64,000 nt of DNA, taken from IMG/VR virus record IMGVR_UViG_3300032046_000001, positions 62,001-126,000 of that record; one strand, written 5' to 3'. A model generated the notes under the pieces. It ran no database searches. It was not told the DNA's origin and was given only the letters and a program-made list of their open reading frames with translations. This document shows, piece by piece, positions 16,113 through 47,797 of this stretch. Both the position numbers and the translations under genes were made by a program. Each line of letters begins with the position of its first letter. Position 1 is the first letter of the stretch.

Positions 16113-16811
16113 ATGAGCATGAATAATGAATTAATCGATATAACCACGACGGCAACTCTACGACCTAAAATATTAGATTATACACTAAATTCATTTTGTA
16201 AAAATATGTTGATTGATAGAGACAGATATCGTTTAATTATTAATATAGATCCTATTGGTGATAAAGTACTTCCAAAAGAAGTTTTAAAAGTTGCTAAAAA
16301 ATATTTTGATAATATATTATATAATTATGCTGATACTCCAGGATTTGCAAAAGCTGTTATTTGGTGTTGGTCACAAGTTCAAGCTGATTATGTCGTACAT
16401 CTTGAAGATGATTGGGAACTACTAATACCAATTAATATAGACAACATGATATCTATATTAGATAGTTATCCAACTATGGCTAGTTTAAGACTCAATAAAT
16501 TTAAAACCAGAAAAAATAAATGTAGTATTAAACGTGGATATTATCCGTTTCCACAATTATCGTTGAATCCAACATTATTTAGTGGAAAATTTATTAAAGG
16601 CGTATTTCCACTGATGAGAACTTCTAGTAATCCAGAAAAACAACTAAGACCAGTTGACAATAGTGAACTGAGTATATATCTCAGAAAGTGGAACCATGCT
16701 ATTTACACTAAAAGTTCTCATGGAAAAATAATAAAAGATATCGGAAGGATATGGATGAATAGTACACCATTTAAAAAGAAAACTGGATTTTTAAATTGGG
16801 AGAAAAAATAA
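16113..16811 (+). CDS. GT2-like glycosyltransferase
   Basis: INIDP, HLEDDW and SLNP; paralog of 30568. Confidence 0.7.
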   Translation: MSMNNELIDITTTATLRPKILDYTLNSFCKNMLIDRDRYRLIINIDPIGDKVLPKEVLKVAKKYFDNILYNYADTPGFAKAVIWCWSQVQADYVVHLEDDWELLIPINIDNMISILDSYPTMASLRLNKFKTRKNKCSIKRGYYPFPQLSLNPTLFSGKFIKGVFPLMRTSSNPEKQLRPVDNSELSIYLRKWNHAIYTKSSHGKIIKDIGRIWMNSTPFKKKTGFLNWEKK

Positions 16812-17735
16812 TTGAAAATATTATTACTCAGTAGAAATCAATTATATAAAAGAAATTGGGGAAGAGAACTATTTAAACGAGATGTGTCTAAATATCATGA
16901 TGTCAGATATTATGGAAGATCTTATCCAAATTCTCCATCTAAAAATATACAACAAATTTTAAATGAAGTTTCAAAACCAGATATTATTTTTACGCATGTA
17001 ATGTTTTATGCATCTTATTTTAATGGATATGAATCAACAAATATTCCTAAAGTTCATTTGGAAGTAGACTATGTCTTACCAAAAGATACGTATCCAGGAA
17101 CCATCTATGCCCAAAATCCATTTTATAAAAAAAGTAAATATAATTTAATATTTGGCGTCACAAAAAGAATGGTTATGGATATGAAAAATCAAAATATCGC
17201 ACCAAAAATTTTTTGGTTGCCATTTTCAGTTTCTACCGATAAATACAAAAATTTAAATTTAGAAAAAACAATTGATGTTATGTCTGTTTTTTTAGTAAAA
17301 GATTATCTATATCCAAACAGAAGATATTTACAAGAAGTAGTTCATTCACTAAAAAATAATTTAAAAATAAATGTTTTTACAAATTATGTTGTTCATGAAG
17401 AATATATTAAAAAAATAAATCAGTCAAAAATATTTATAACAAGTAATAACCTTTATAATTCATTAAATATGAAATATACAGAAGTACTAGCGTGTGGAAC
17501 ATTATTATTCGCAAATGAACCAGAAGACTTAACAGATATTAAACTTAAAGATGGAGAACATTTAATTATTTATAAAAATTGGAAAGATTTGAAATCTAAG
17601 GTTCGATATTATTTATCTCATGATAAAGAACGTGAAGAAATCGCGCAAAATGGAATGAATTTTGTGAGAGAACATCATAGTAATGAAATCAGAATAAAAG
17701 AAATGACAGAAATAATTCAAAAAGAGGTTTTATGA
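16812..17735 (+). CDS. CgeB-like GT-B glycosyltransferase (Glyco_trans_1_2)
   Basis: KYTEVLACG...DGEH...YYLSHDKEREEIAQNG; TTG start. Confidence 0.75.
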   Translation: MKILLLSRNQLYKRNWGRELFKRDVSKYHDVRYYGRSYPNSPSKNIQQILNEVSKPDIIFTHVMFYASYFNGYESTNIPKVHLEVDYVLPKDTYPGTIYAQNPFYKKSKYNLIFGVTKRMVMDMKNQNIAPKIFWLPFSVSTDKYKNLNLEKTIDVMSVFLVKDYLYPNRRYLQEVVHSLKNNLKINVFTNYVVHEEYIKKINQSKIFITSNNLYNSLNMKYTEVLACGTLLFANEPEDLTDIKLKDGEHLIIYKNWKDLKSKVRYYLSHDKEREEIAQNGMNFVREHHSNEIRIKEMTEIIQKEVL

Positions 17736-18328
17736 AAATATATGAAAATTTAGATATCAATGATTTAGAAAATGAGATTTGGAAGACTATAGATGGTTAT
17801 CCAGATTATTCGGTAAGTAATCTTGGTAGAGTTAAATCATTAAAATTTGGAAAAGAAAAAATACTAAAACAAATTAAAGATGGTGAATATTTTATAATTA
17901 ATTTATCAGTTAAAAATAAGAAATATAAAAGAACAATTCATCGTTTAGTTTTTGAAACTTTTAATGATTATAAATTAGAATCATATGAATGTGTACATCA
18001 CAAAAATGAAAGTAAGAAAAATAATTATTATAAAAATTTAGAAAAAATGACAATAAAAAATCATAATTCAATTAATAATCTAGGAAAAGTAGCATCGATA
18101 GAAACAAAAATTAAAATGAGTAAAAATCAACCTGTTAAAAAAGGAGAAAAAAATTCAAACCATAAATTAAAAAATGGAGAAGTTTGGTTAATTAAAAAAA
18201 TATTAAATTCGGATTATTATAAATCTGGAAAAATAAATCAAACTTTTATTGGAAAGATGTTTAAAGTTAATAGACAAACAATTTCAGATATAAAGTGTGG
18301 AAAAACTTGGTCTCATATAAAAATATAA
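17732..18328 (+). CDS. NUMOD4-HNH homing endonuclease
   Basis: NUMOD4, CVHHKN and HTH; sits between two paralogous GT genes. Confidence 0.85.
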   Translation: MKIYENLDINDLENEIWKTIDGYPDYSVSNLGRVKSLKFGKEKILKQIKDGEYFIINLSVKNKKYKRTIHRLVFETFNDYKLESYECVHHKNESKKNNYYKNLEKMTIKNHNSINNLGKVASIETKIKMSKNQPVKKGEKNSNHKLKNGEVWLIKKILNSDYYKSGKINQTFIGKMFKVNRQTISDIKCGKTWSHIKI

Positions 18329-18337
18329 AGGAAAAAC

Positions 18338-19261
18338 ATGCGAATACTTTTACTAAGTCCAAATCAAATTTCTCGATATAACAGAACGCACCAGATTTTT
18401 CGCAATGAGATTGGAAGACAAAATCAAGTAACATATTACGGTTCAGGATATCCAAATTATATTCCTAATAAACCAATTCCTCAAGTTGTTAAAGAACTTG
18501 GTGACTTTGATATCATTATGACTTACGGATTACGGTATACTGAACCCTTTATTGGAATTGGAGAAATAAAAGTACCTCGCGTCCACATTGCTGTAGACTA
18601 TTTCCCAGTAGGTGGTGGTAGTGGAACATATGAAAGAAATCACAGATTATTCAGAAGAGACAAATATAATTTATACTTCGGAGTTGTTGGAGATATCGTA
18701 AAAAATTTAGTAAAAAATGGAGTATGTAAAAAAGCATTCTTATTACCATTTTCAATAGATACAAATATTTATAATAATTTAAATTTGAAAAAAGATATAG
18801 ATGTATTTGCTGTATTTAGTACAGGAAATAATATATATCCAAATAGAGAAAGAATTCAAAGGTTTATAAAATCAATGAACGGAGTTTCAACTTTTACTAA
18901 AAAAGTAGTTCATAGAAGATATATAAATATGATAAATAGATCTAAACTTTGTATAACTAGTAATAATAAATTTAGATCATTGAGTATAAAATATTATGAA
19001 ATTATGGCGTGTGGAAGTTTATTATTAGCTGACGAACCGGAAGATTTGAATACATTGGGATTTGTTAATGGGGAACACTTGATATTATATACAAATAATT
19101 TAAAAGATCTAAAAAATAAAATTAAATATTGTTTATCTCATGATAAAGAACGAGAAGAAATAGCAAATAATGGAATGAAATTTATCAGAGAAAAACACAG
19201 CAATGAAATACGAGTAAAACAAATGACAGAAATCATACGAGAAGAATTAGGTATAAAATAA
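18338..19261 (+). CDS. CgeB-like GT-B glycosyltransferase, paralog of 16812
   Basis: KYYEIMACG, LSHDKEREEIA, HSNEIR. Confidence 0.75.
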   Translation: MRILLLSPNQISRYNRTHQIFRNEIGRQNQVTYYGSGYPNYIPNKPIPQVVKELGDFDIIMTYGLRYTEPFIGIGEIKVPRVHIAVDYFPVGGGSGTYERNHRLFRRDKYNLYFGVVGDIVKNLVKNGVCKKAFLLPFSIDTNIYNNLNLKKDIDVFAVFSTGNNIYPNRERIQRFIKSMNGVSTFTKKVVHRRYINMINRSKLCITSNNKFRSLSIKYYEIMACGSLLLADEPEDLNTLGFVNGEHLILYTNNLKDLKNKIKYCLSHDKEREEIANNGMKFIREKHSNEIRVKQMTEIIREELGIK

Positions 19262-27413: not shown

Positions 27414-27613
27414 AAACCGATAAAGTTATTAGAGTTGAATTAGAGGGCAATGATCTTAAAACTTTTGAAGATGTTTACACTATTGTACATAATTATTTTT
27501 CTAGTTGGACGTCAACCAATACAACACCAGAAAAATTAATTGAACAAAATAGAATCAAAAATAATGAAATTAAAATACTATCTTTATTAAGTGATATCAA
27601 GAGGATGATATAA
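27410..27613 (+). CDS. Hypothetical protein
   Basis: Translationally coupled ORF. Confidence 0.55.
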   Translation: MKTDKVIRVELEGNDLKTFEDVYTIVHNYFSSWTSTNTTPEKLIEQNRIKNNEIKILSLLSDIKRMI

Positions 27614-27822
27614 TGAAAACTGAAACAGTGATCGGATTTAAAAATGACGAAGTAAGAACTTTAAATAAAGTGTGTGATTTTGTAACAGAATCTTTAGGAA
27701 GATGTTTTTGTACTGGTTCTAGTAGTATGGACAAAGATCCAGTTCTTTCACTAGATAAAGAATCTGTAGATGAATTATACAAGTTTGTACAAGCTCTAAA
27801 GAAAGAAGTAAATAAAGAATGA
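27613..27822 (+). CDS. Hypothetical protein
   Basis: SD GAGG; similar to the N-terminus of 27819. Confidence 0.55.
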   Translation: MKTETVIGFKNDEVRTLNKVCDFVTESLGRCFCTGSSSMDKDPVLSLDKESVDELYKFVQALKKEVNKE

Positions 27823-28223
27823 GTACTACATTAAAATTATCAAATAAAGAAATTATAGATTTAAATTTGATGTGTAAAATGATGTCATTTACAATAGGAA
27901 GTTGTTACTCAACATCGAATAACTGTGTGCCATCTCTTTATACATCATTTAATTCAAATGATATAAATAATATAAAAGATTTTAATAATAAATTAATGAA
28001 TAAAATAATAGAAGAAGAATCTGATAATTTAGAAGTTCCAAAAATAGAAAAAACTTTTATAGAAGAATTAAGATATTTGATCAATCAATACAGTAAAGAA
28101 AACGGTTCAGATACTCCAGATTTTATATTATCTGAATATTTAAATGAATGTCTTGAATTATTCAATAAAATAATAAATAAAAGAGAAGATTGGTATGGAC
28201 AGAAATTAAATGAAAATTTATGA
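27819..28223 (+). CDS. Hypothetical protein
   Basis: C-terminal SKENGSDTPDFIL-type phage ORFan domain. Confidence 0.6.
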   Translation: MSTTLKLSNKEIIDLNLMCKMMSFTIGSCYSTSNNCVPSLYTSFNSNDINNIKDFNNKLMNKIIEEESDNLEVPKIEKTFIEELRYLINQYSKENGSDTPDFILSEYLNECLELFNKIINKREDWYGQKLNENL

Positions 28224-28839
28224 AAATTTAGATATTAATGATTTAGATGGAGAAGTTTGGAAAACAATAGAAGGATATCCTGATTACCAAGTTAGTAATC
28301 TTGGTAGAGTTAAAAGAATTATTGTAGATAGATGGAATCATAAATTAAAAATATTAAAACAAAATAAAAATAATAATAAATATTTTAAAGTTAGTTTATC
28401 TAAAAATGGAATATCAAAAACTAAATTGGTTCATCGTCTTGTTTTTGAAACCTTTAAAGAAAGATTAAAAGATGGGCATGATGCTCATCACATAAATGAA
28501 GATAAAGAATATAATTTTATTAATAATTTAGAATCTAAACCACACGGAAAACATATAGAAGACCATAGAAAAGGAAAGAAACTTTCAGAAGAAACTAAAA
28601 ATAGAATTAGTGAAAGTAGTGAAGGAAAAATATTATCTGAAGAAACAAAAAAGAAAATGAGTGAAAGTAAAAAAGGAGAAAATCATCCAAATTTTAAAAT
28701 AACAAATCCAAAAATCATTGGTATTCAAATAGATATAGAAAATAGAAATTTGACACAAAAAGAAATTGGTAGAAAAAACAGAATTTCCCAGTCAATGATA
28801 TCTAAAATAAAAACAGGAAAAATTAGGTATCATATATGA
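28210..28839 (+). CDS. NUMOD4-HNH homing endonuclease with NUMOD3 and HTH
   Basis: NUMOD4, AHHINEDKEYN, SEETKKKMSE. Confidence 0.85.
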   Translation: MKIYENLDINDLDGEVWKTIEGYPDYQVSNLGRVKRIIVDRWNHKLKILKQNKNNNKYFKVSLSKNGISKTKLVHRLVFETFKERLKDGHDAHHINEDKEYNFINNLESKPHGKHIEDHRKGKKLSEETKNRISESSEGKILSEETKKKMSESKKGENHPNFKITNPKIIGIQIDIENRNLTQKEIGRKNRISQSMISKIKTGKIRYHI

Positions 28840-29933
28840 AGATTGCAACAGTAATTGGAAATCGTCCACAAATAATAAAAACTTGTTTATTTTCAAATAA
28901 AGTAAGACAATTAGGAATTAAAGAAATATTGATAAATACAAATCAGCACTATGATTTTAATTTATCAGATATATTTTTCAAAGAATTAAATGTGCCACTT
29001 CCCGATTATAATTTAAATATTGGTGGTACTTCTCCATGTCAGCAAATAGGAAATGGAATAATTAAACTTGAAAAAATACTACTAAAAGAAATGCCAAGTA
29101 TACTAGTTGTATTTGGTGACACAAATTCTACATTAATCGGAGCATTAACAGCCAAAAAATTAAGTATTCCTATTGCACATATCGAGTCTGGTATGCGTTG
29201 CTTCGACAAAAATATGCCAGAAGAAACAAACAGAGTACTGACAGATCACATGTCTGATTACTTATTTTGTCCGTCTCAAGTTTCATATCAAAATTTGGCA
29301 AAAGAACATCTTATTAAACCAGATAAGACAATTATTTCTGGTGATGTTATGATCGATGTTCTCATAGAAGTTATGAAAAAGATTGATGAAGATGAAATAT
29401 TTAATAAAATTAAAAATAAATATAAAGTAGAAAAAGATAGTTATATTTTAACAACTGTTCATAGGGCAGAAAATACTGATAATATAGACAGACTAAAAAA
29501 TATAATTGAAGCTCTAATTGAAATATCAAATGATATTCCTGTTGTATTTCCAATTCACCCCAGAACAGAGAAAATTTTGAAGAATCTAAAATTAGATCTT
29601 CCTAAAAATTTAATTATTATTGATCCAGTTGGTTATAAAGACATGTTAATATTGGAGAAGAATTCCAAGTTAATTATTACAGACTCAGGCGGGATACAGA
29701 GGGAGGTGTATTTCTTTAGGAAGCCTAGTGTAATCACTAGAAATTCTACAGAGTGGGTAGAACTTATACTGTGTGGATATTCAAAATTAGTTGATACGAT
29801 TAACAAAAATGAAATTACAAGTTCTATTAAAGAATTATTAAATGATAATTATTTAAATAATAAAAATTGGGATGCTTTTTATGGAATAGGGAATAGTACA
29901 AATATTATAATAAAATATTTAATTGGAGATTAA
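28836..29933 (+). CDS. wecB: Non-hydrolysing UDP-GlcNAc 2-epimerase (WecB/WbpI family)
   Basis: GNRPQIIK, QHYD, GDTNST, HIESGMR, PEETNR, TDSGGIQRE. Confidence 0.9.
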   Translation: MKIATVIGNRPQIIKTCLFSNKVRQLGIKEILINTNQHYDFNLSDIFFKELNVPLPDYNLNIGGTSPCQQIGNGIIKLEKILLKEMPSILVVFGDTNSTLIGALTAKKLSIPIAHIESGMRCFDKNMPEETNRVLTDHMSDYLFCPSQVSYQNLAKEHLIKPDKTIISGDVMIDVLIEVMKKIDEDEIFNKIKNKYKVEKDSYILTTVHRAENTDNIDRLKNIIEALIEISNDIPVVFPIHPRTEKILKNLKLDLPKNLIIIDPVGYKDMLILEKNSKLIITDSGGIQREVYFFRKPSVITRNSTEWVELILCGYSKLVDTINKNEITSSIKELLNDNYLNNKNWDAFYGIGNSTNIIIKYLIGD

Positions 29934-30565
29934 TATTGTGGAAGTATATAAAAATTTAAATTTAAAAAATCTGGAAAATGAAATCTGGAAAGTTATAATA
30001 GACTTTCCAGATTATCAAGTTAGTAATTTAGGCAGAATTAAAAGTTTTAAACAAAATAAAATAAATGGAAAAATACGAAAACAAAAGAAAAATAAAGATG
30101 GATATTTAGAAATTGATTTATGTAAAAATGGAATATCAAAAACTAAATTAGTTCATCGTTTAGTTTATGAAAACTTCAAAGAAAAGTTAGAAGAAAAGTA
30201 TGATGCTCATCATATAAATGGGGATAGAGAATATAATTTTATTAATAATTTAGAACCTGTATTACACAGTGAACATTCAATTGGTAAAATAGTTTCAGAA
30301 GAAACCAAAAGAAAAATAAGTAAAAATCATGCTGATTTTAAAGGAAGATCTGGTATTAAAAGACCAGGAGAAGACAACCAAAATTCAAAGTTAAAAGATG
30401 GAGAAGTCTGGTTAATTAAAAAAATATTAAATTCGGATTATTATAAATCTGGAAAAATAACTCAGAAATTTATAGGAAATATGTTTGGTGTTGTTCAAAC
30501 TGTAATTTCAAAAATAAAACTTGGAAAATCATGGTCGCATATAAAATATTTAATCGGAGAATAAT
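29910..30565 (+). mobile_element. HNH cassette bounded by 25-bp direct repeats (23/25 identical)
   Basis: ATAAAATATTTAAT(T/C)GGAGA(T/A)TAAT at 29910-29934 and 30541-30565. Confidence 0.6.
29938..30564 (+). CDS. NUMOD4-HNH homing endonuclease
   Basis: NUMOD4, HNH and HTH; GTG at 29938 matches paralog starts and has SD GGAG. Confidence 0.8.
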   Translation: MEVYKNLNLKNLENEIWKVIIDFPDYQVSNLGRIKSFKQNKINGKIRKQKKNKDGYLEIDLCKNGISKTKLVHRLVYENFKEKLEEKYDAHHINGDREYNFINNLEPVLHSEHSIGKIVSEETKRKISKNHADFKGRSGIKRPGEDNQNSKLKDGEVWLIKKILNSDYYKSGKITQKFIGNMFGVVQTVISKIKLGKSWSHIKYLIGE

Positions 30566-30567
30566 GA

Positions 30568-31251
30568 ATGATTGACATTACCATGACATCTACAATTAGA
30601 CCTGAGATTTTAAAAAGAACATTAGAATCATTTTGTCAAAATATGTTCATTGATAAAAATAAATATCGTTTAATTATTAATATAGATCCAATTGGTGAAG
30701 ACATAAAACCAAAATTCATTTTAAAAACAGCACAAGAATATTTTGATAATATAGTTTATAGATATCCATCAGAACCAGGATTCACTAAAGCTATTATCTG
30801 GACATGGAGTCAAGTTAAATCTGATTATGTTTTTAATCTACAAGACGATTTTAAATTATTACGACCAATTAATATTGATTATATGATTGAAGTATTAGAA
30901 AATAATCCAAAATTGGCCAGTCTTCGTTTAAATAAGAATGAAACACCAATTAATAATGGAGATACTGAATTTACAATATGTCCGAGAATATCTCTAAATC
31001 CTATTTTATTCAAATATGAATTTATTAAAGGAGTAACTCCATTAATGACACCAGACGAAAACCCAGAGAAACAATTAAGACATTCTTTAAAAAGTGAAAG
31101 AGGAAGATTCATAAGAAAATGGGAACATGGAATTTATATAAAAGAATCAAGAGATCGAATTGTTGAAGATATTGGAAGAAAATGGATTAATAAAAGTATA
31201 TATCATAAAAAAATAGGATTTACAAAATGGGAAATAAAAGATGAAAACTAA
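30568..31251 (+). CDS. GT2-like glycosyltransferase, paralog of 16113
   Basis: IDIT, YRLIINIDPIG, NLQDDF, NPEKQLR. Confidence 0.7.
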   Translation: MIDITMTSTIRPEILKRTLESFCQNMFIDKNKYRLIINIDPIGEDIKPKFILKTAQEYFDNIVYRYPSEPGFTKAIIWTWSQVKSDYVFNLQDDFKLLRPINIDYMIEVLENNPKLASLRLNKNETPINNGDTEFTICPRISLNPILFKYEFIKGVTPLMTPDENPEKQLRHSLKSERGRFIRKWEHGIYIKESRDRIVEDIGRKWINKSIYHKKIGFTKWEIKDEN

Positions 31252-31654
31252 TGAACAAATAAATTTTTTAAATAATATAGTTGATAAATCATTTTCAGAA
31301 ATAACTGAGCGGTATTCTCCACTAATATTTACATCAGAAATTGATTGTTTATATTTTAAAAAAAATAGAGATTATATGATATGTAAAAAAAATGGTGATT
31401 TTATTATGTGGAATGATGACGCTGAACATGAGAAGATTTTAAATGAACATTCAGATTTAATAGAAAATAAAGATGAAAATATTAATCTAAAAGATGGTCA
31501 AAAATCAAAATGTTGTATAAATGGAAATAAATATATTACATATTTTAAATCATCCACTGGATGGTTAAAGAATGGATGGATGTTTGATATAAATGGATTA
31601 TGTGTTGATATCAACTACTGTCCCTTTTGCGGAAAAAAATTATATAACAAATAA
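31241..31654 (+). CDS. Hypothetical protein with C-terminal YCPFCG Zn-finger
   Basis: INYCPFCGKKL. Confidence 0.6.
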   Translation: MKTNEQINFLNNIVDKSFSEITERYSPLIFTSEIDCLYFKKNRDYMICKKNGDFIMWNDDAEHEKILNEHSDLIENKDENINLKDGQKSKCCINGNKYITYFKSSTGWLKNGWMFDINGLCVDINYCPFCGKKLYNK

Positions 31655-31662
31655 GGAGAAAA

Positions 31663-31956
31663 ATGTTTACAGAAGAAGAATCTGAAAGTGACTTGTATAA
31701 GTATAAGTATAAGCGCACAGAACCAGACAGTATTATAAAGTGGTATAAGAATAATATTTTAGTAGAGGTTCATCCAATTTCAACACTACAAAGCGATTTG
31801 GGACACAAAGCTCAAATTATTCATGATGGTGATAACTATGTCATTCTTCTAGAAGTAATAAATGAAAGCTACTATCTTGAATGTGCTGTTATTTTTCCAG
31901 ATGTATTTGATGTATTGATTATGTTACCAAATCCAAAAGAGGTTAGAATTGAATGA
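31663..31956 (+). CDS. Hypothetical protein, paralog of 31981
   Basis: Shared GHK.QI.H...Y.ILLE...IFP.VFD.L..LPNP. Confidence 0.65.
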   Translation: MFTEEESESDLYKYKYKRTEPDSIIKWYKNNILVEVHPISTLQSDLGHKAQIIHDGDNYVILLEVINESYYLECAVIFPDVFDVLIMLPNPKEVRIE

Positions 31957-31980
31957 TTACTCCACACCAATGGAGGAACT

Positions 31981-32238
31981 ATGTATAAAATAATTGAGAC
32001 AGACAAAGAAGCTAAATGGGGAAGTGGTCATCTTACTACAACTGTAGTTCCAGTAGCCACTATGGAAAATCAATATGGGCATAAAGTACAGATAGTCCAT
32101 CACGATAACGCATACTTGATTTTGTTAGAACAGAAAGATGGAACATATAAACATACAGCGTGGATATTCCCAGAAGTATTTGATATTTTAAAAACATTAC
32201 CTAACCCTTTAACACACAAGCCAGAGATGATGATTTAG
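31981..32238 (+). CDS. Hypothetical protein, paralog of 31663
   Basis: SD GGAGG; shared blocks as above. Confidence 0.65.
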   Translation: MYKIIETDKEAKWGSGHLTTTVVPVATMENQYGHKVQIVHHDNAYLILLEQKDGTYKHTAWIFPEVFDILKTLPNPLTHKPEMMI

Positions 32239-32252
32239 TCATCTCTGGTTTA
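32221..32252 (+). terminator. Rho-independent terminator
   Basis: CCAGAGATGA/TCATCTCTGG stem followed by TTT. Confidence 0.65.
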
Positions 32253-32266
32253 TTCTCATTTTAAGG

Positions 32267-32297
32267 TCAAATTAAAAATATTATGATATTAACATAT
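32267..32297 (+). promoter_or_regulatory. Bipartite promoter-like motif TCAAATT-N17-AACA
   Basis: Immediately after a terminator, heading the next operon. Confidence 0.6.
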
Positions 32298-32334
32298 AAA
32301 TGAATTTTTAAATTAAATTTTTTTGGAGGATATA

Positions 32335-32454
32335 ATGAAACCAGAAATATATGGAAAAGGTGAATGGGCAAGTATATCATACTGTCCACCAGTAACGACA
32401 ATTTATTTATTTAAAACAGAAGAAGCTAAAAAACTTGATCAGAGTGATAAATAG
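32335..32454 (+). CDS. 39-aa ORF, truncated paralog of 34268
   Basis: MKPEIYGKGEWASISYCPPVTTIYLFKT vs MKTQINGMGRWACIDACPSYTMIYLFNT; SD GGAGG. Confidence 0.5.
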   Translation: MKPEIYGKGEWASISYCPPVTTIYLFKTEEAKKLDQSDK

Positions 32455-32470
32455 GAGAAATAAAAGGTAA

Positions 32471-32881
32471 ATGAAAATATACACTCTATATAGTGGAGTT
32501 TGTGAAGACAGACGAGTTGTTGGATTATTTACTTCTATAAAAAAATTAAATGAATTTAAAAATAGATATCACTCTCAGGAAAGTTATGATGAAGATCCTG
32601 AAGTCTTTGAAGTTGATTATTTTCCTGATGTAACTGAAGACAAAAAAATATATTTTGTAAATAGAAAATTAATATTTTCTGAAGAAGAATATACAACTTT
32701 CACATCCGACATCGCAGAAATGGGAAATGTAAATAAGATGTTTGATGATGTTTTTGGAAATTATGTCACAACTTATGTATGGGCATCATCTGAAGGTGAA
32801 GCTATCAATATAGCTAAGAAGTTATTTGAAGAAGCGGATAAAAATAAGAAAAGAAAAAAGGAAACATCACTCTTTCTATAG
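32471..32881 (+). CDS. Hypothetical protein
   Basis: 136-aa ORF in operon. Confidence 0.6.
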   Translation: MKIYTLYSGVCEDRRVVGLFTSIKKLNEFKNRYHSQESYDEDPEVFEVDYFPDVTEDKKIYFVNRKLIFSEEEYTTFTSDIAEMGNVNKMFDDVFGNYVTTYVWASSEGEAINIAKKLFEEADKNKKRKKETSLFL

Positions 32882-47150: not shown

Positions 47151-47797
47151 AAATATTTAAAAATTTAGACTTACAAGATTTAGATGGTGAGATCTGGAAA
47201 GTTATAAAAGACTTTCCAGACTATTCTGTGAGTAATTTAGGTAGAGTTAAAAGTTTTAAATATGATAAAATAAATGGAAAAATAAGAAAACAACAAAAAA
47301 GTGATAAACATTTATTTCTTAGATTATGTAAAAATGGAAAACAAAAAAATAAAAAAATTCATATTTTAGAATTTGAATTTTTTAATAATTATAAATTAAA
47401 AGAAGATGAATGTGTTCATCATATTGATTTTAATCCAGAAAATAATATTTTAAATAATTTAATAATAATGCCAAAATCAGAGCATATTAAATTACATATG
47501 ACTGGAAAAGTATTTTCGGAAAAACATAAAAATAAAATGAGTGAAAATCATATTGGAATGAAAGGAAAATATCATTCTAAAGAAACAAAAAAATTAATGA
47601 GTATTAGTAGAATAATTAGTGGAAAACAAAAAGGTGAAAATAATCCAAGTCACAAATTAACAGAAGAACAAGTAATTCAAATTAAATTATTATTAAAAGA
47701 AGGTATATTAACTCAACAAGAAATAGCTGATATATTTGGAGTTGACAGAAAAACTATTTCGAATATAAAAACTGGAAGAACTTGGTATTATATATGA
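47147..47797 (+). CDS. NUMOD4-HNH homing endonuclease
   Basis: NUMOD4, CVHHIDFNPENN, NUMOD3, HTH; 12-bp flanking direct repeat. Confidence 0.85.
   Translation: MKIFKNLDLQDLDGEIWKVIKDFPDYSVSNLGRVKSFKYDKINGKIRKQQKSDKHLFLRLCKNGKQKNKKIHILEFEFFNNYKLKEDECVHHIDFNPENNILNNLIIMPKSEHIKLHMTGKVFSEKHKNKMSENHIGMKGKYHSKETKKLMSISRIISGKQKGENNPSHKLTEEQVIQIKLLLKEGILTQQEIADIFGVDRKTISNIKTGRTWYYI

What the first reader, a model, noticed from the sequence alone, without database searches (positions are those of the whole stretch)
29910..30565. HNH cassette flanked by a 25-bp target-site-like duplication that copies the host gene's stop codon and the next gene's RBS
Seen: ATAAAATATTTAATTGGAGATTAAT (29910-34) and ATAAAATATTTAATCGGAGAATAAT (30541-65), 23/25 identical. 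As a result the epimerase ends IKYLIGD* and the HNH protein ends IKYLIGE*, whereas its closest C-terminal paralog (17732) ends WSHIKI*. Removing one repeat plus the cassette restores an epimerase-GT junction. Established: classical homing is gene conversion and leaves no duplication. Inference: these cassettes reach new sites by a microhomology- or duplication-generating route that preserves operon translation.
Basis: partly seen in the sequence, partly recalled or inferred. Interest (0 to 1): 0.68.

Follow-up and report, generated by a model that had tools for sequence, protein, structure and literature searches.

The report
Recombination scar beside a phage homing-endonuclease gene
A selfish nuclease gene sits between two sugar-pathway genes of a 312-kb phage, and the 25-base repeat on either side of it is real, but it is a one-off scar of sloppy recombination at a short shared sequence, not the regular way these genes move.

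Summary
The repeat is real: 29910-29934 and 30541-30565 match at 23 of 25 bases. They bracket exactly one ORF, an I-HmuI-like NUMOD4/HNH homing endonuclease gene (GTG start at 29938, ends 30564). It lies between a UDP-GlcNAc 2-epimerase gene and a glycosyltransferase gene of a 312,420-bp metagenomic jumbo phage.

Four related phage lineages have the empty site, with a single copy of the motif running straight into the glycosyltransferase start.

The general inference does not hold. None of about 29 other copies in this genome has such a boundary repeat, nor do four complete copies in relatives. The closest version of this same gene in the same slot (L019) lacks the second copy, and so does a different HNH in that slot (L018).

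The first 6-10 bases of the right copy are the HNH family's own conserved last codons (His-Ile-Lys, often Tyr). Only about 16 bases are copied epimerase tail.

Best reading: a microhomology-mediated, illegitimate right-hand junction made during homing or recombination, in a region that is visibly mosaic. The product was probably kept because it preserves both the epimerase end and the ribosome-binding site of the next gene. This type of event is known from T4. The order of events is unresolved, and read-level evidence could not be obtained.

The parts
28836..29933 (+). UDP-GlcNAc 2-epimerase gene, short form (365 aa). It is the upstream gene whose last 7 codons plus stop form the left repeat copy. 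It is mosaic: nt 1-340 resemble L022/L105, nt 361-765 resemble L011/L018, and nt 766-1098 resemble the short-form L105/L109.
   Evidence: Pfam Epimerase_2, E=3e-94; sliding-window identities
29910..29934 (+). Left repeat copy. It covers epimerase codons I-K-Y-L-I-G-D, the stop and one more base, and contains GGAG (29925-29928) 9 nt before the HNH start.
29938..30564 (+). Free-standing HNH homing endonuclease gene (208 aa, GTG start). It has NUMOD4 and HNH_3 domains and a C-terminal helix-turn-helix-like module. It is itself mosaic: the first ~25 nt are identical to L105, and the rest is closest to L109/L019.
   Evidence: Pfam NUMOD4 54.8 bits and HNH_3 28.8 bits; I-HmuI 1U3E, E=3.9e-9; JGI gene call; DNA alignment
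30541..30549 (+). Microhomology part of the right copy (ATAAAATAT, codons I-K-Y). It coincides with the HNH family's conserved terminal His-Ile-Lys(-Tyr) codons and with the epimerase Ile-Lys-Tyr codons. This is the inferred crossover point.
   Evidence: family C-termini; codons of paralogs
30550..30565 (+). Copied epimerase tail (16 nt: codons L-I-G-E, the stop and one more base). It gives the HNH its foreign YLIGE end and carries GGAG (30556-30559) 8 nt before the glycosyltransferase ATG. The whole right 25-mer (30541-30565) is identical at 25/25 to the epimerase end of relative L018.
30568..31251 (+). Glycosyltransferase-like gene (227 aa). It is the downstream gene, and its start and spacer are the same as at the empty sites of relatives.
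   Evidence: weak Pfam Glycos_transf_2 match; homologs and their contexts
28210..28839 (+). Second HNH paralog just upstream of the epimerase. It is absent at this position in L011, L017, L020, L022, L105 and L109. It was inserted seamlessly at ATGAAAAT/ATGA with no boundary repeat.

Best explanation
The 631 bases between and including one repeat copy are a free-standing, I-HmuI-like HNH homing endonuclease gene. It occupies a recurrent 'slot' between the epimerase stop and the glycosyltransferase start.

In this phage the right-hand boundary was not made by ordinary homologous repair. The HNH gene's conserved last codons (CAT ATA AAA, probably TAT) were joined to the identical bases in the last codons of an epimerase gene (ATA AAA TAT TTA ...), a 6-10 base microhomology. 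The HNH therefore reads on through 16 bases of epimerase tail, giving the YLIGE end. The original ribosome-binding site, spacer and start of the glycosyltransferase remain intact downstream.

The left side is a normal junction directly after the epimerase stop, shared with relative L105.

The event is most likely an imprecise ('one-sided') homing or unequal recombination between an occupied and an empty allele. The alternative is that it is the original illegitimate invasion. The product was probably retained because, in this tightly packed operon, the next gene's ribosome-binding site lies inside the previous gene's last codons. Only a duplication keeps both.

Shown: the repeat, the empty sites, absence of the duplication elsewhere, the family's native end, and the mosaicism.
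Inferred: the break-repair mechanism, the direction of change, and the selective benefit.
For: - Empty sites with a single copy of the motif occur in 4 lineages: L011 set, L017, L020/21 and L022.
- The same slot is filled by differing, mosaic HNH genes in the window, L105-108, L109/L019 and L018. All begin 1-7 nt after the epimerase stop.
- L019's HNH fragment is 80% identical in protein to residues 89-206 of the window's. It ends CLK* in an ATGA overlap and lacks 22 nt that the window has.
- Only the window's protein, of 64 homologs, ends in LIG[ED]. The family core ends W-x-H-I/V-K, and about 10 of 64 continue with Y.
- Paralogs carry CAT ATA/ATT AAA, and the closest in-genome paralog continues with TAT.
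- The right copy is 25/25 identical to L018's epimerase end. The left copy carries ATT, as the short-form epimerases do, plus a private GAT.
- Identity to relatives switches around the HNH, consistent with co-conversion tracts.
- GGAG is the commonest ribosome-binding motif in this genome: 55% of ORFs have such a motif, against 12% at random positions.
- In phage T4, one-sided homing with junctions at microhomology is on record. The review PMC2988022 cites Parker et al. 1999 for it.
Against: - Direction is unresolved. L019 could equally have lost 22 nt from a window-like ancestor; the deletion would be flanked by AAT/AAT.
- The glycosyltransferase 5' region next to the right copy is only 76-91% identical to any sampled relative. 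The parental allele of the right copy is therefore not identified.
- L019 and L109 are short contigs from different runs, linked only by an 18-nt overlap in a conserved motif.
- With 25 bases, arguments from 2 differences are weak.
- No cleavage site, endonuclease activity or read-level heterogeneity was tested.
Confidence: 0.65

Rival explanations
1. True target-site duplication: the cassette inserts by a transposition-like or staggered-cut mechanism that regularly duplicates about 25 bp of target.
For: Direct repeats sit exactly at the cassette boundaries. Removing the cassette plus one copy restores the empty site seen in relatives.
Against: - No comparable boundary repeat occurs in 29 other copies in the genome or in 4 complete copies in relatives.
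- The closest relative of this HNH in the same slot lacks it.
- The cassette holds only the HNH ORF, and no terminal inverted repeats were found.
- The first 6-10 nt of the right copy are native HNH codons.
- Two other polymorphic HNH sites are seamless or carry a small replacement of target sequence.
Confidence: 0.07
2. The duplicated state is the original product of the first, ectopic invasion of this slot, made by illegitimate repair at microhomologies on both sides. Relatives such as L019 later trimmed it by a 22-nt deletion. This shares the mechanism of the best explanation but reverses the order of events.
For: - The microhomology is the same.
- The L019 difference is a clean 22-nt gap flanked by AAT.
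- L019's HNH end (CLK*) is one residue shorter than the family end.
Against: - ATGA-overlap junctions occur in two different HNH sublineages in this slot (L018, L019) and at other sites in the genome. Parsimony therefore mildly favours them as ancestral.
- The right copy carries ATC/GAA while the left carries the short-form ATT. This fits two parental alleles better than one duplicated target.
Confidence: 0.22
3. Chance or convergent similarity, for example AT-rich sequence plus selection for a ribosome-binding site, or an assembly artefact.
For: The genome is 28.6% G+C, and GGAG-type motifs precede many genes.
Against: - The match is 23/25 including synonymous positions, and 25/25 to L018's epimerase end.
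- A genome-wide scan finds no other such pair bracketing an HNH gene.
- Three assemblies give the same gene spacing at both junctions.
- A 25-nt repeat is shorter than typical assembly words.
Confidence: 0.04

Closest known systems
I-HmuI (Bacillus phage SPO1), an HNH homing endonuclease; PDB 1U3E
   Same: The sequences are related over the N-terminal DNA-binding and HNH parts (E=3.9e-9, query residues 17-109). The H-H...N...H motif region (DAHHING...NLE...EH) is present. Cultured-phage relatives of about 33-36% identity are annotated as HNH homing endonucleases.
   Different: I-HmuI is encoded inside a group I intron and is a nicking enzyme (from my own knowledge). This gene stands free between genes. 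Its cleavage chemistry and target are untested.
Free-standing homing endonuclease genes of T4-like phages (seg and mob genes) and 'intronless homing'
   Same: The gene is intergenic and sits between conserved genes. It is present or absent among related phages, and the flanking genes are mosaic, consistent with co-conversion (review PMC2988022).
   Different: The copy number here is very high: about 24 full-length paralogs plus about 6 partial ones in 312 kb, against 12 free-standing endonuclease genes in T4 according to the review. Homing leaves no duplication, whereas this copy has a 25-nt boundary repeat.
[quoted passage not shown]
   Same: One junction is made at a site of microhomology while the other side is homologous. 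That paper proposed this as the way such elements reach ectopic sites.
   Different: That was a laboratory assay with an intron-encoded GIY-YIG enzyme. Here it is a natural junction of a free-standing HNH gene. It is in frame, gives the endonuclease a foreign C-terminal tail, and duplicates a gene end that contains the next gene's ribosome-binding site. The original paper could not be read here.

Membership tests
HNH homing endonuclease (I-HmuI-like, NUMOD4 + HNH_3) | HNH catalytic motif and NUMOD-type DNA-binding modules | tested here: met
   NUMOD4 scores 54.8 bits (cut-off 23.4) and HNH_3 scores 28.8 bits (cut-off 24.8). I-HmuI 1U3E matches at E=3.9e-9.
HNH homing endonuclease (I-HmuI-like, NUMOD4 + HNH_3) | Present/absent polymorphism at the same site among related genomes | tested here: met
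   The site is empty in the L011 set, L017, L020/21 and L022. It is occupied in the window, L105-108, L109/L019 and L018.
HNH homing endonuclease (I-HmuI-like, NUMOD4 + HNH_3) | Site-specific cleavage of the empty allele, and copying of the gene into it | not testable with these tools
   This needs enzyme assays or co-infection crosses. The mosaic flanks are only consistent with co-conversion.
Transposon-like element with target-site duplication | Duplication of fixed length flanking each copy | tested here: not met
   Only this copy, of about 34 examined, has a boundary repeat.
Transposon-like element with target-site duplication | Transposase or integrase gene, or terminal inverted repeats, within the element | tested here: not met
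   The 603 nt between the two copies lie entirely within the HNH ORF, apart from three bases before its start. No inverted repeat lies at the termini.
Illegitimate (microhomology-mediated) break repair junction, as in one-sided homing | Junction lies in a short stretch identical in both parental sequences | tested here: met
   ATAAAA(TAT) is shared by the conserved HNH end and the epimerase end.
Illegitimate (microhomology-mediated) break repair junction, as in one-sided homing | The other junction is homologous or ordinary | tested here: inconclusive
   The left junction is identical to that of L105, and the adjacent epimerase 3' part is of the short-form type. The parental alleles were not sampled.
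Illegitimate (microhomology-mediated) break repair junction, as in one-sided homing | The event is triggered by endonuclease cleavage | not testable with these tools
   No cleavage data are available.

The most novel reading that the evidence does not exclude
This HNH family may colonise new intergenic slots routinely by one-ended breaks, as expected from an I-HmuI-type nickase, followed by template switching at its own conserved end codons (His-Ile-Lys at the 3' end, ATGAAAAT at the 5' end). Duplicated gene ends such as this one would then be short-lived intermediates that are later trimmed to ATGA overlaps. The 25-nt repeat would also permit scarless loss of the gene.
Probability: 0.15. Interest if true: 0.65.

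Novelty: new member of a known kind. Interest (0 to 1): 0.4.

Why it matters
How free-standing homing endonuclease genes first enter a new site is poorly documented in nature. Laboratory work in T4 pointed to illegitimate repair at microhomologies. Here a natural junction can be read base by base against real empty and differently filled alleles. It shows that kind of scar, and it shows how an insertion can avoid damaging a tightly packed operon in which the ribosome-binding site of one gene lies inside the end of the previous gene. It also shows that the feature is an exception, not a rule, in a genome carrying about 30 such genes.

Tried and rejected
There is therefore no read-level test for empty or excised forms, and run X2 (which holds 53% of the stretch's words) could not be examined.
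- One search, a local promoter/terminator consensus scan of window 27500-32500, did span them. That was an oversight; nothing from it is used beyond the statement that promoter-like sites do not exceed chance.
- **Viral contigs.** Searches with the epimerase, the HNH, the glycosyltransferase and a junction pattern found no close relative.
- **Metagenome contigs.** The scan with a glycosyltransferase alignment returned, besides the window's own record, only relatives of 59% identity or less, none with an epimerase upstream.
- **Parker et al. 1999** is not held.
- **Replacement of the whole epimerase as a unit** was considered. The gene is mosaic rather than foreign as a whole, so only its 3' third is linked to the HNH.
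- **A native origin of the tail** was considered, because paralog g17874 ends LDGE*. Its DNA differs from the right copy, whereas the epimerase ends of relatives match the right copy at up to 25/25.

Full report
**Setting.** The window is bases 62001-126000 of a 312,420-bp virus record with direct terminal repeats, from a sediment metagenome. Its G+C content is 28.6%. Genes in the region are tightly packed on the + strand.

**The observation.** The two 25-mers lie at 29910-29934 and 30541-30565 and match at 23/25.
- Both begin on a codon boundary. The epimerase (28836-29933; Pfam Epimerase_2, E=3e-94) ends IKYLIGD*. The next ORF ends IKYLIGE*.
- That ORF is a NUMOD4 + HNH_3 protein related to the homing endonuclease I-HmuI (PDB 1U3E, E=3.9e-9).
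- Its real start is most likely GTG at 29938. This aligns with the MKIYENL starts of paralogs and is the start JGI called.
- Each repeat copy places GGAG 8-9 nt before a start codon. GGAG is the commonest ribosome-binding motif in this genome: 55% of ORFs of at least 80 aa have such a motif, against 12% at random positions.
- Genome-wide, pairs matching at >=23/25 and lying 300-1500 nt apart form 28 clusters. Most of the others lie in internally repetitive stretches or near the genome end, and none brackets an HNH gene.
- A second long assembly and Logan contigs crossing each junction give the same gene spacing.

**The empty site exists.** Homologs of the glycosyltransferase led to syntenic contigs of related phages. 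In four lineages the epimerase stop is followed within 2-4 nt by the glycosyltransferase start. These lineages are the L011 set, L017, L020/L021 and L022.
- In L017 the epimerase ends IIKYLIGE*. The DNA from the motif through the glycosyltransferase start is almost the same as the window's right copy plus what follows it.
- Removing 29935-30565 from the window reproduces this junction.

**The duplication is an exception.**
- The genome holds about 24 full-length paralogs of this HNH gene and about 6 that share only the C-terminal module.
- I scanned the sequence around each start against the sequence around each stop. The score was 19 for this copy and at most 13 for the others. The best of the others are only the common ATGAAAA start context or AT-rich matches that are not at the boundaries.
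- Four complete HNH genes in other phages' contigs scored at most 11.
- At a second polymorphic site the window (31957-31980), L011 and L020 are empty, while L017, L018, L019 and L022 are occupied. There the insertion replaced about 40 nt of spacer and duplicated nothing.
- The HNH gene just upstream of the epimerase (28210-28839) is missing at that position in six relatives. It was inserted seamlessly. Its ATGAAAAT start sits where the epimerase start was, and its stop is the TGA within the epimerase's ATGA.

**The same slot in other phages.** The epimerase/glycosyltransferase slot is also filled in three other lineages.
- L105-108: the left junction and the GTG GAA GTA start are the same as in the window, but the contigs stop inside the HNH.
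- L109 and L019: L109 carries a short-form epimerase and the 5' half of an HNH. L019 carries the 3' half of an HNH followed by the glycosyltransferase. The two contigs are linked only by an 18-nt overlap.
- L018: the HNH here is only 39% identical to the window's.
- L019's HNH fragment is 80% identical in protein to residues 89-206 of the window's. It ends CLK* with its TGA overlapping the glycosyltransferase ATG. Against it, the window has 22 extra bases, which are the copied epimerase tail.
- L018 ends with the family's native HIKI*, also in an ATGA overlap.
- The left boundary is therefore nearly constant (1-7 nt after the epimerase stop), while the right boundary differs in each lineage.

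**What the repeat is made of.**
- Of the 64 closest homologs, only the window's own protein ends in LIG[ED].
- The family core ends W-x-H-(I/V)-K and is followed by a short variable tail. About ten homologs continue with Y.
- At the DNA level paralogs have CAT ATA/ATT AAA, and the closest in-genome paralog continues with TAT.
- The first 6-10 bases of the right copy (ATAAAATAT) are therefore the HNH gene's own. They happen to equal the epimerase's Ile-Lys-Tyr codons. Only the following 16 bases are foreign to the HNH.
- This is the signature of a junction formed at a microhomology, not of a staggered cut.
- The tails of other copies also often run into the ribosome-binding site or start codon of the next gene.

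**Mosaicism.** Identity to relatives switches along the region.
- Epimerase nt 1-340 are closest to L022/L105 (about 80-89%).
- Epimerase nt 361-765 are closest to L011/L018 (87-98%).
- Epimerase nt 766-1098 are of the short-form L105/L109 type.
- The first ~25 nt of the HNH are identical to L105, and the rest is closest to L109/L019.
- From about nt 630 of the glycosyltransferase onward, identity is 93-100% to L011/L018.
- All three short-form epimerases are followed by an HNH. Only one of five long-form epimerases is.
- This is what co-conversion of flanking markers during homing would produce.
- The right copy is 25/25 identical to L018's epimerase end. The left copy carries the short-form ATT and a private GAT.
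- This mildly favours two parental alleles over duplication of a single target. With 25 bases the argument is weak.

**Mechanism.** I take the structure to be the product of an imprecise homing or unequal recombination event.
- On the left there was homologous exchange within or after the epimerase.
- On the right, the HNH's His-Ile-Lys(-Tyr) codons were joined illegitimately to the same bases at the end of an epimerase gene of an empty allele.
- In T4, one-sided homing with junctions at microhomology is documented and was proposed as the route to ectopic sites (review PMC2988022, citing Parker et al. 1999).
- From my own knowledge, I-HmuI is a nickase. A nick turned into a one-ended break at a replication fork would suit such a one-sided outcome. 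This is speculation.
- The selective logic is inferred. In the empty allele the glycosyltransferase's GGAG lies inside the epimerase's last codons. An insertion after the stop must therefore either strip the downstream gene of its ribosome-binding site, as in L018 and L019 (which rely on an ATGA overlap), or duplicate the gene end, as here.

**What remains open.**
- The order of events is unknown. The window could have gained the 22 nt, or L019 could have lost them.
- The endonuclease's target and chemistry are unknown.
- It is not known whether the repeat mediates loss of the gene.
- Read-level evidence could not be obtained.

**Verdict.** The mechanism is partly supported: microhomology yes, a regular duplication-generating route no. 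The feature is a natural, unusually legible example of a known kind of event in an ordinary I-HmuI-like homing endonuclease gene.

Noticed in passing
L011:3651-4997, L017:497-1831, L020:3652-4998, L022:131-1465, L018:3-1004; corresponds to a gap after about residue 319 of the window's epimerase (near window 29790): The epimerases of most relatives are 444-448 aa. They carry an internal insertion of roughly 75 aa that hits Pfam RF-1 (weakly in the context tables; listed without a mark for P0187, P0188 and P0190), plus a second insertion of about 14 aa. The window, L105 and L109 have the canonical short form. I did not check by alignment whether the insert keeps the GGQ motif. All three short forms are followed by an HNH gene.
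   Followed up: partly
whole genome G000; in the window at 2285, 7501, 17732, 28210, 29938, 47147 and 63190: About 24 full-length and about 6 partial paralogs of one NUMOD4/HNH family occur in 312 kb, roughly one per 10-13 kb. Several lie inside a cluster of glycosyltransferase, methyltransferase and sulfotransferase genes.
   Followed up: partly
window 28833-28839 and 47791-47797; G000 125810-125816; L018:1636-1642; L019:342-348: Many HNH copies end in ATATGA or AAATGA, so that their stop overlaps the ATG of the next gene. Others end in a purine-rich tail that serves as the next gene's ribosome-binding site. The conserved part of the gene stops at His-Ile-Lys.
   Followed up: partly
window 31957-31980 (empty), against L017:3257-3886, L018:3018-3638, L019:1728-2027 and L022:2851-2964: This is a second polymorphic HNH slot, between the 97-aa and 85-aa genes. 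It is empty in the window, L011 and L020 and occupied in four relatives. The upstream gene then reads about 25 nt into the HNH, about 40 nt of spacer is replaced, and nothing is duplicated.
   Followed up: yes
window 28190-28223: Compared with L011, one extra G shifts the frame at the end of the 134-aa gene, so that it reads 14 nt into the upstream HNH gene and ends ...GQKLNENL* instead of ...DRN*.
   Followed up: partly
window 29979-30017: A hairpin with a perfect 12-bp core stem (29982-30013) lies inside the 5' coding part of the HNH gene. The 121-nt fold has -21 kcal/mol and z = -2.6 against shuffles. It does not cover the ribosome-binding site, and by eye it is not evident in the upstream paralog.
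   Followed up: partly
window 16113-16811 and 16812-19261: A paralog of the glycosyltransferase (56% protein identity overall; 78% DNA identity over 140 nt of its 5' end) lies 14 kb upstream. Two paralogous 307-aa Glyco_trans_1_2 genes flank the HNH copy at 17732.
   Followed up: no
G000:C1:193546-197249 and 311906-311994 (outside the window): There are dense internal direct repeats in one or more large genes at 193-197 kb, and short tandem-like repeats near the genome end.
   Followed up: no
They lie inside the upstream HNH paralog. I worked beside them afterwards, apart from the local consensus scan, which spanned them.
   Followed up: no
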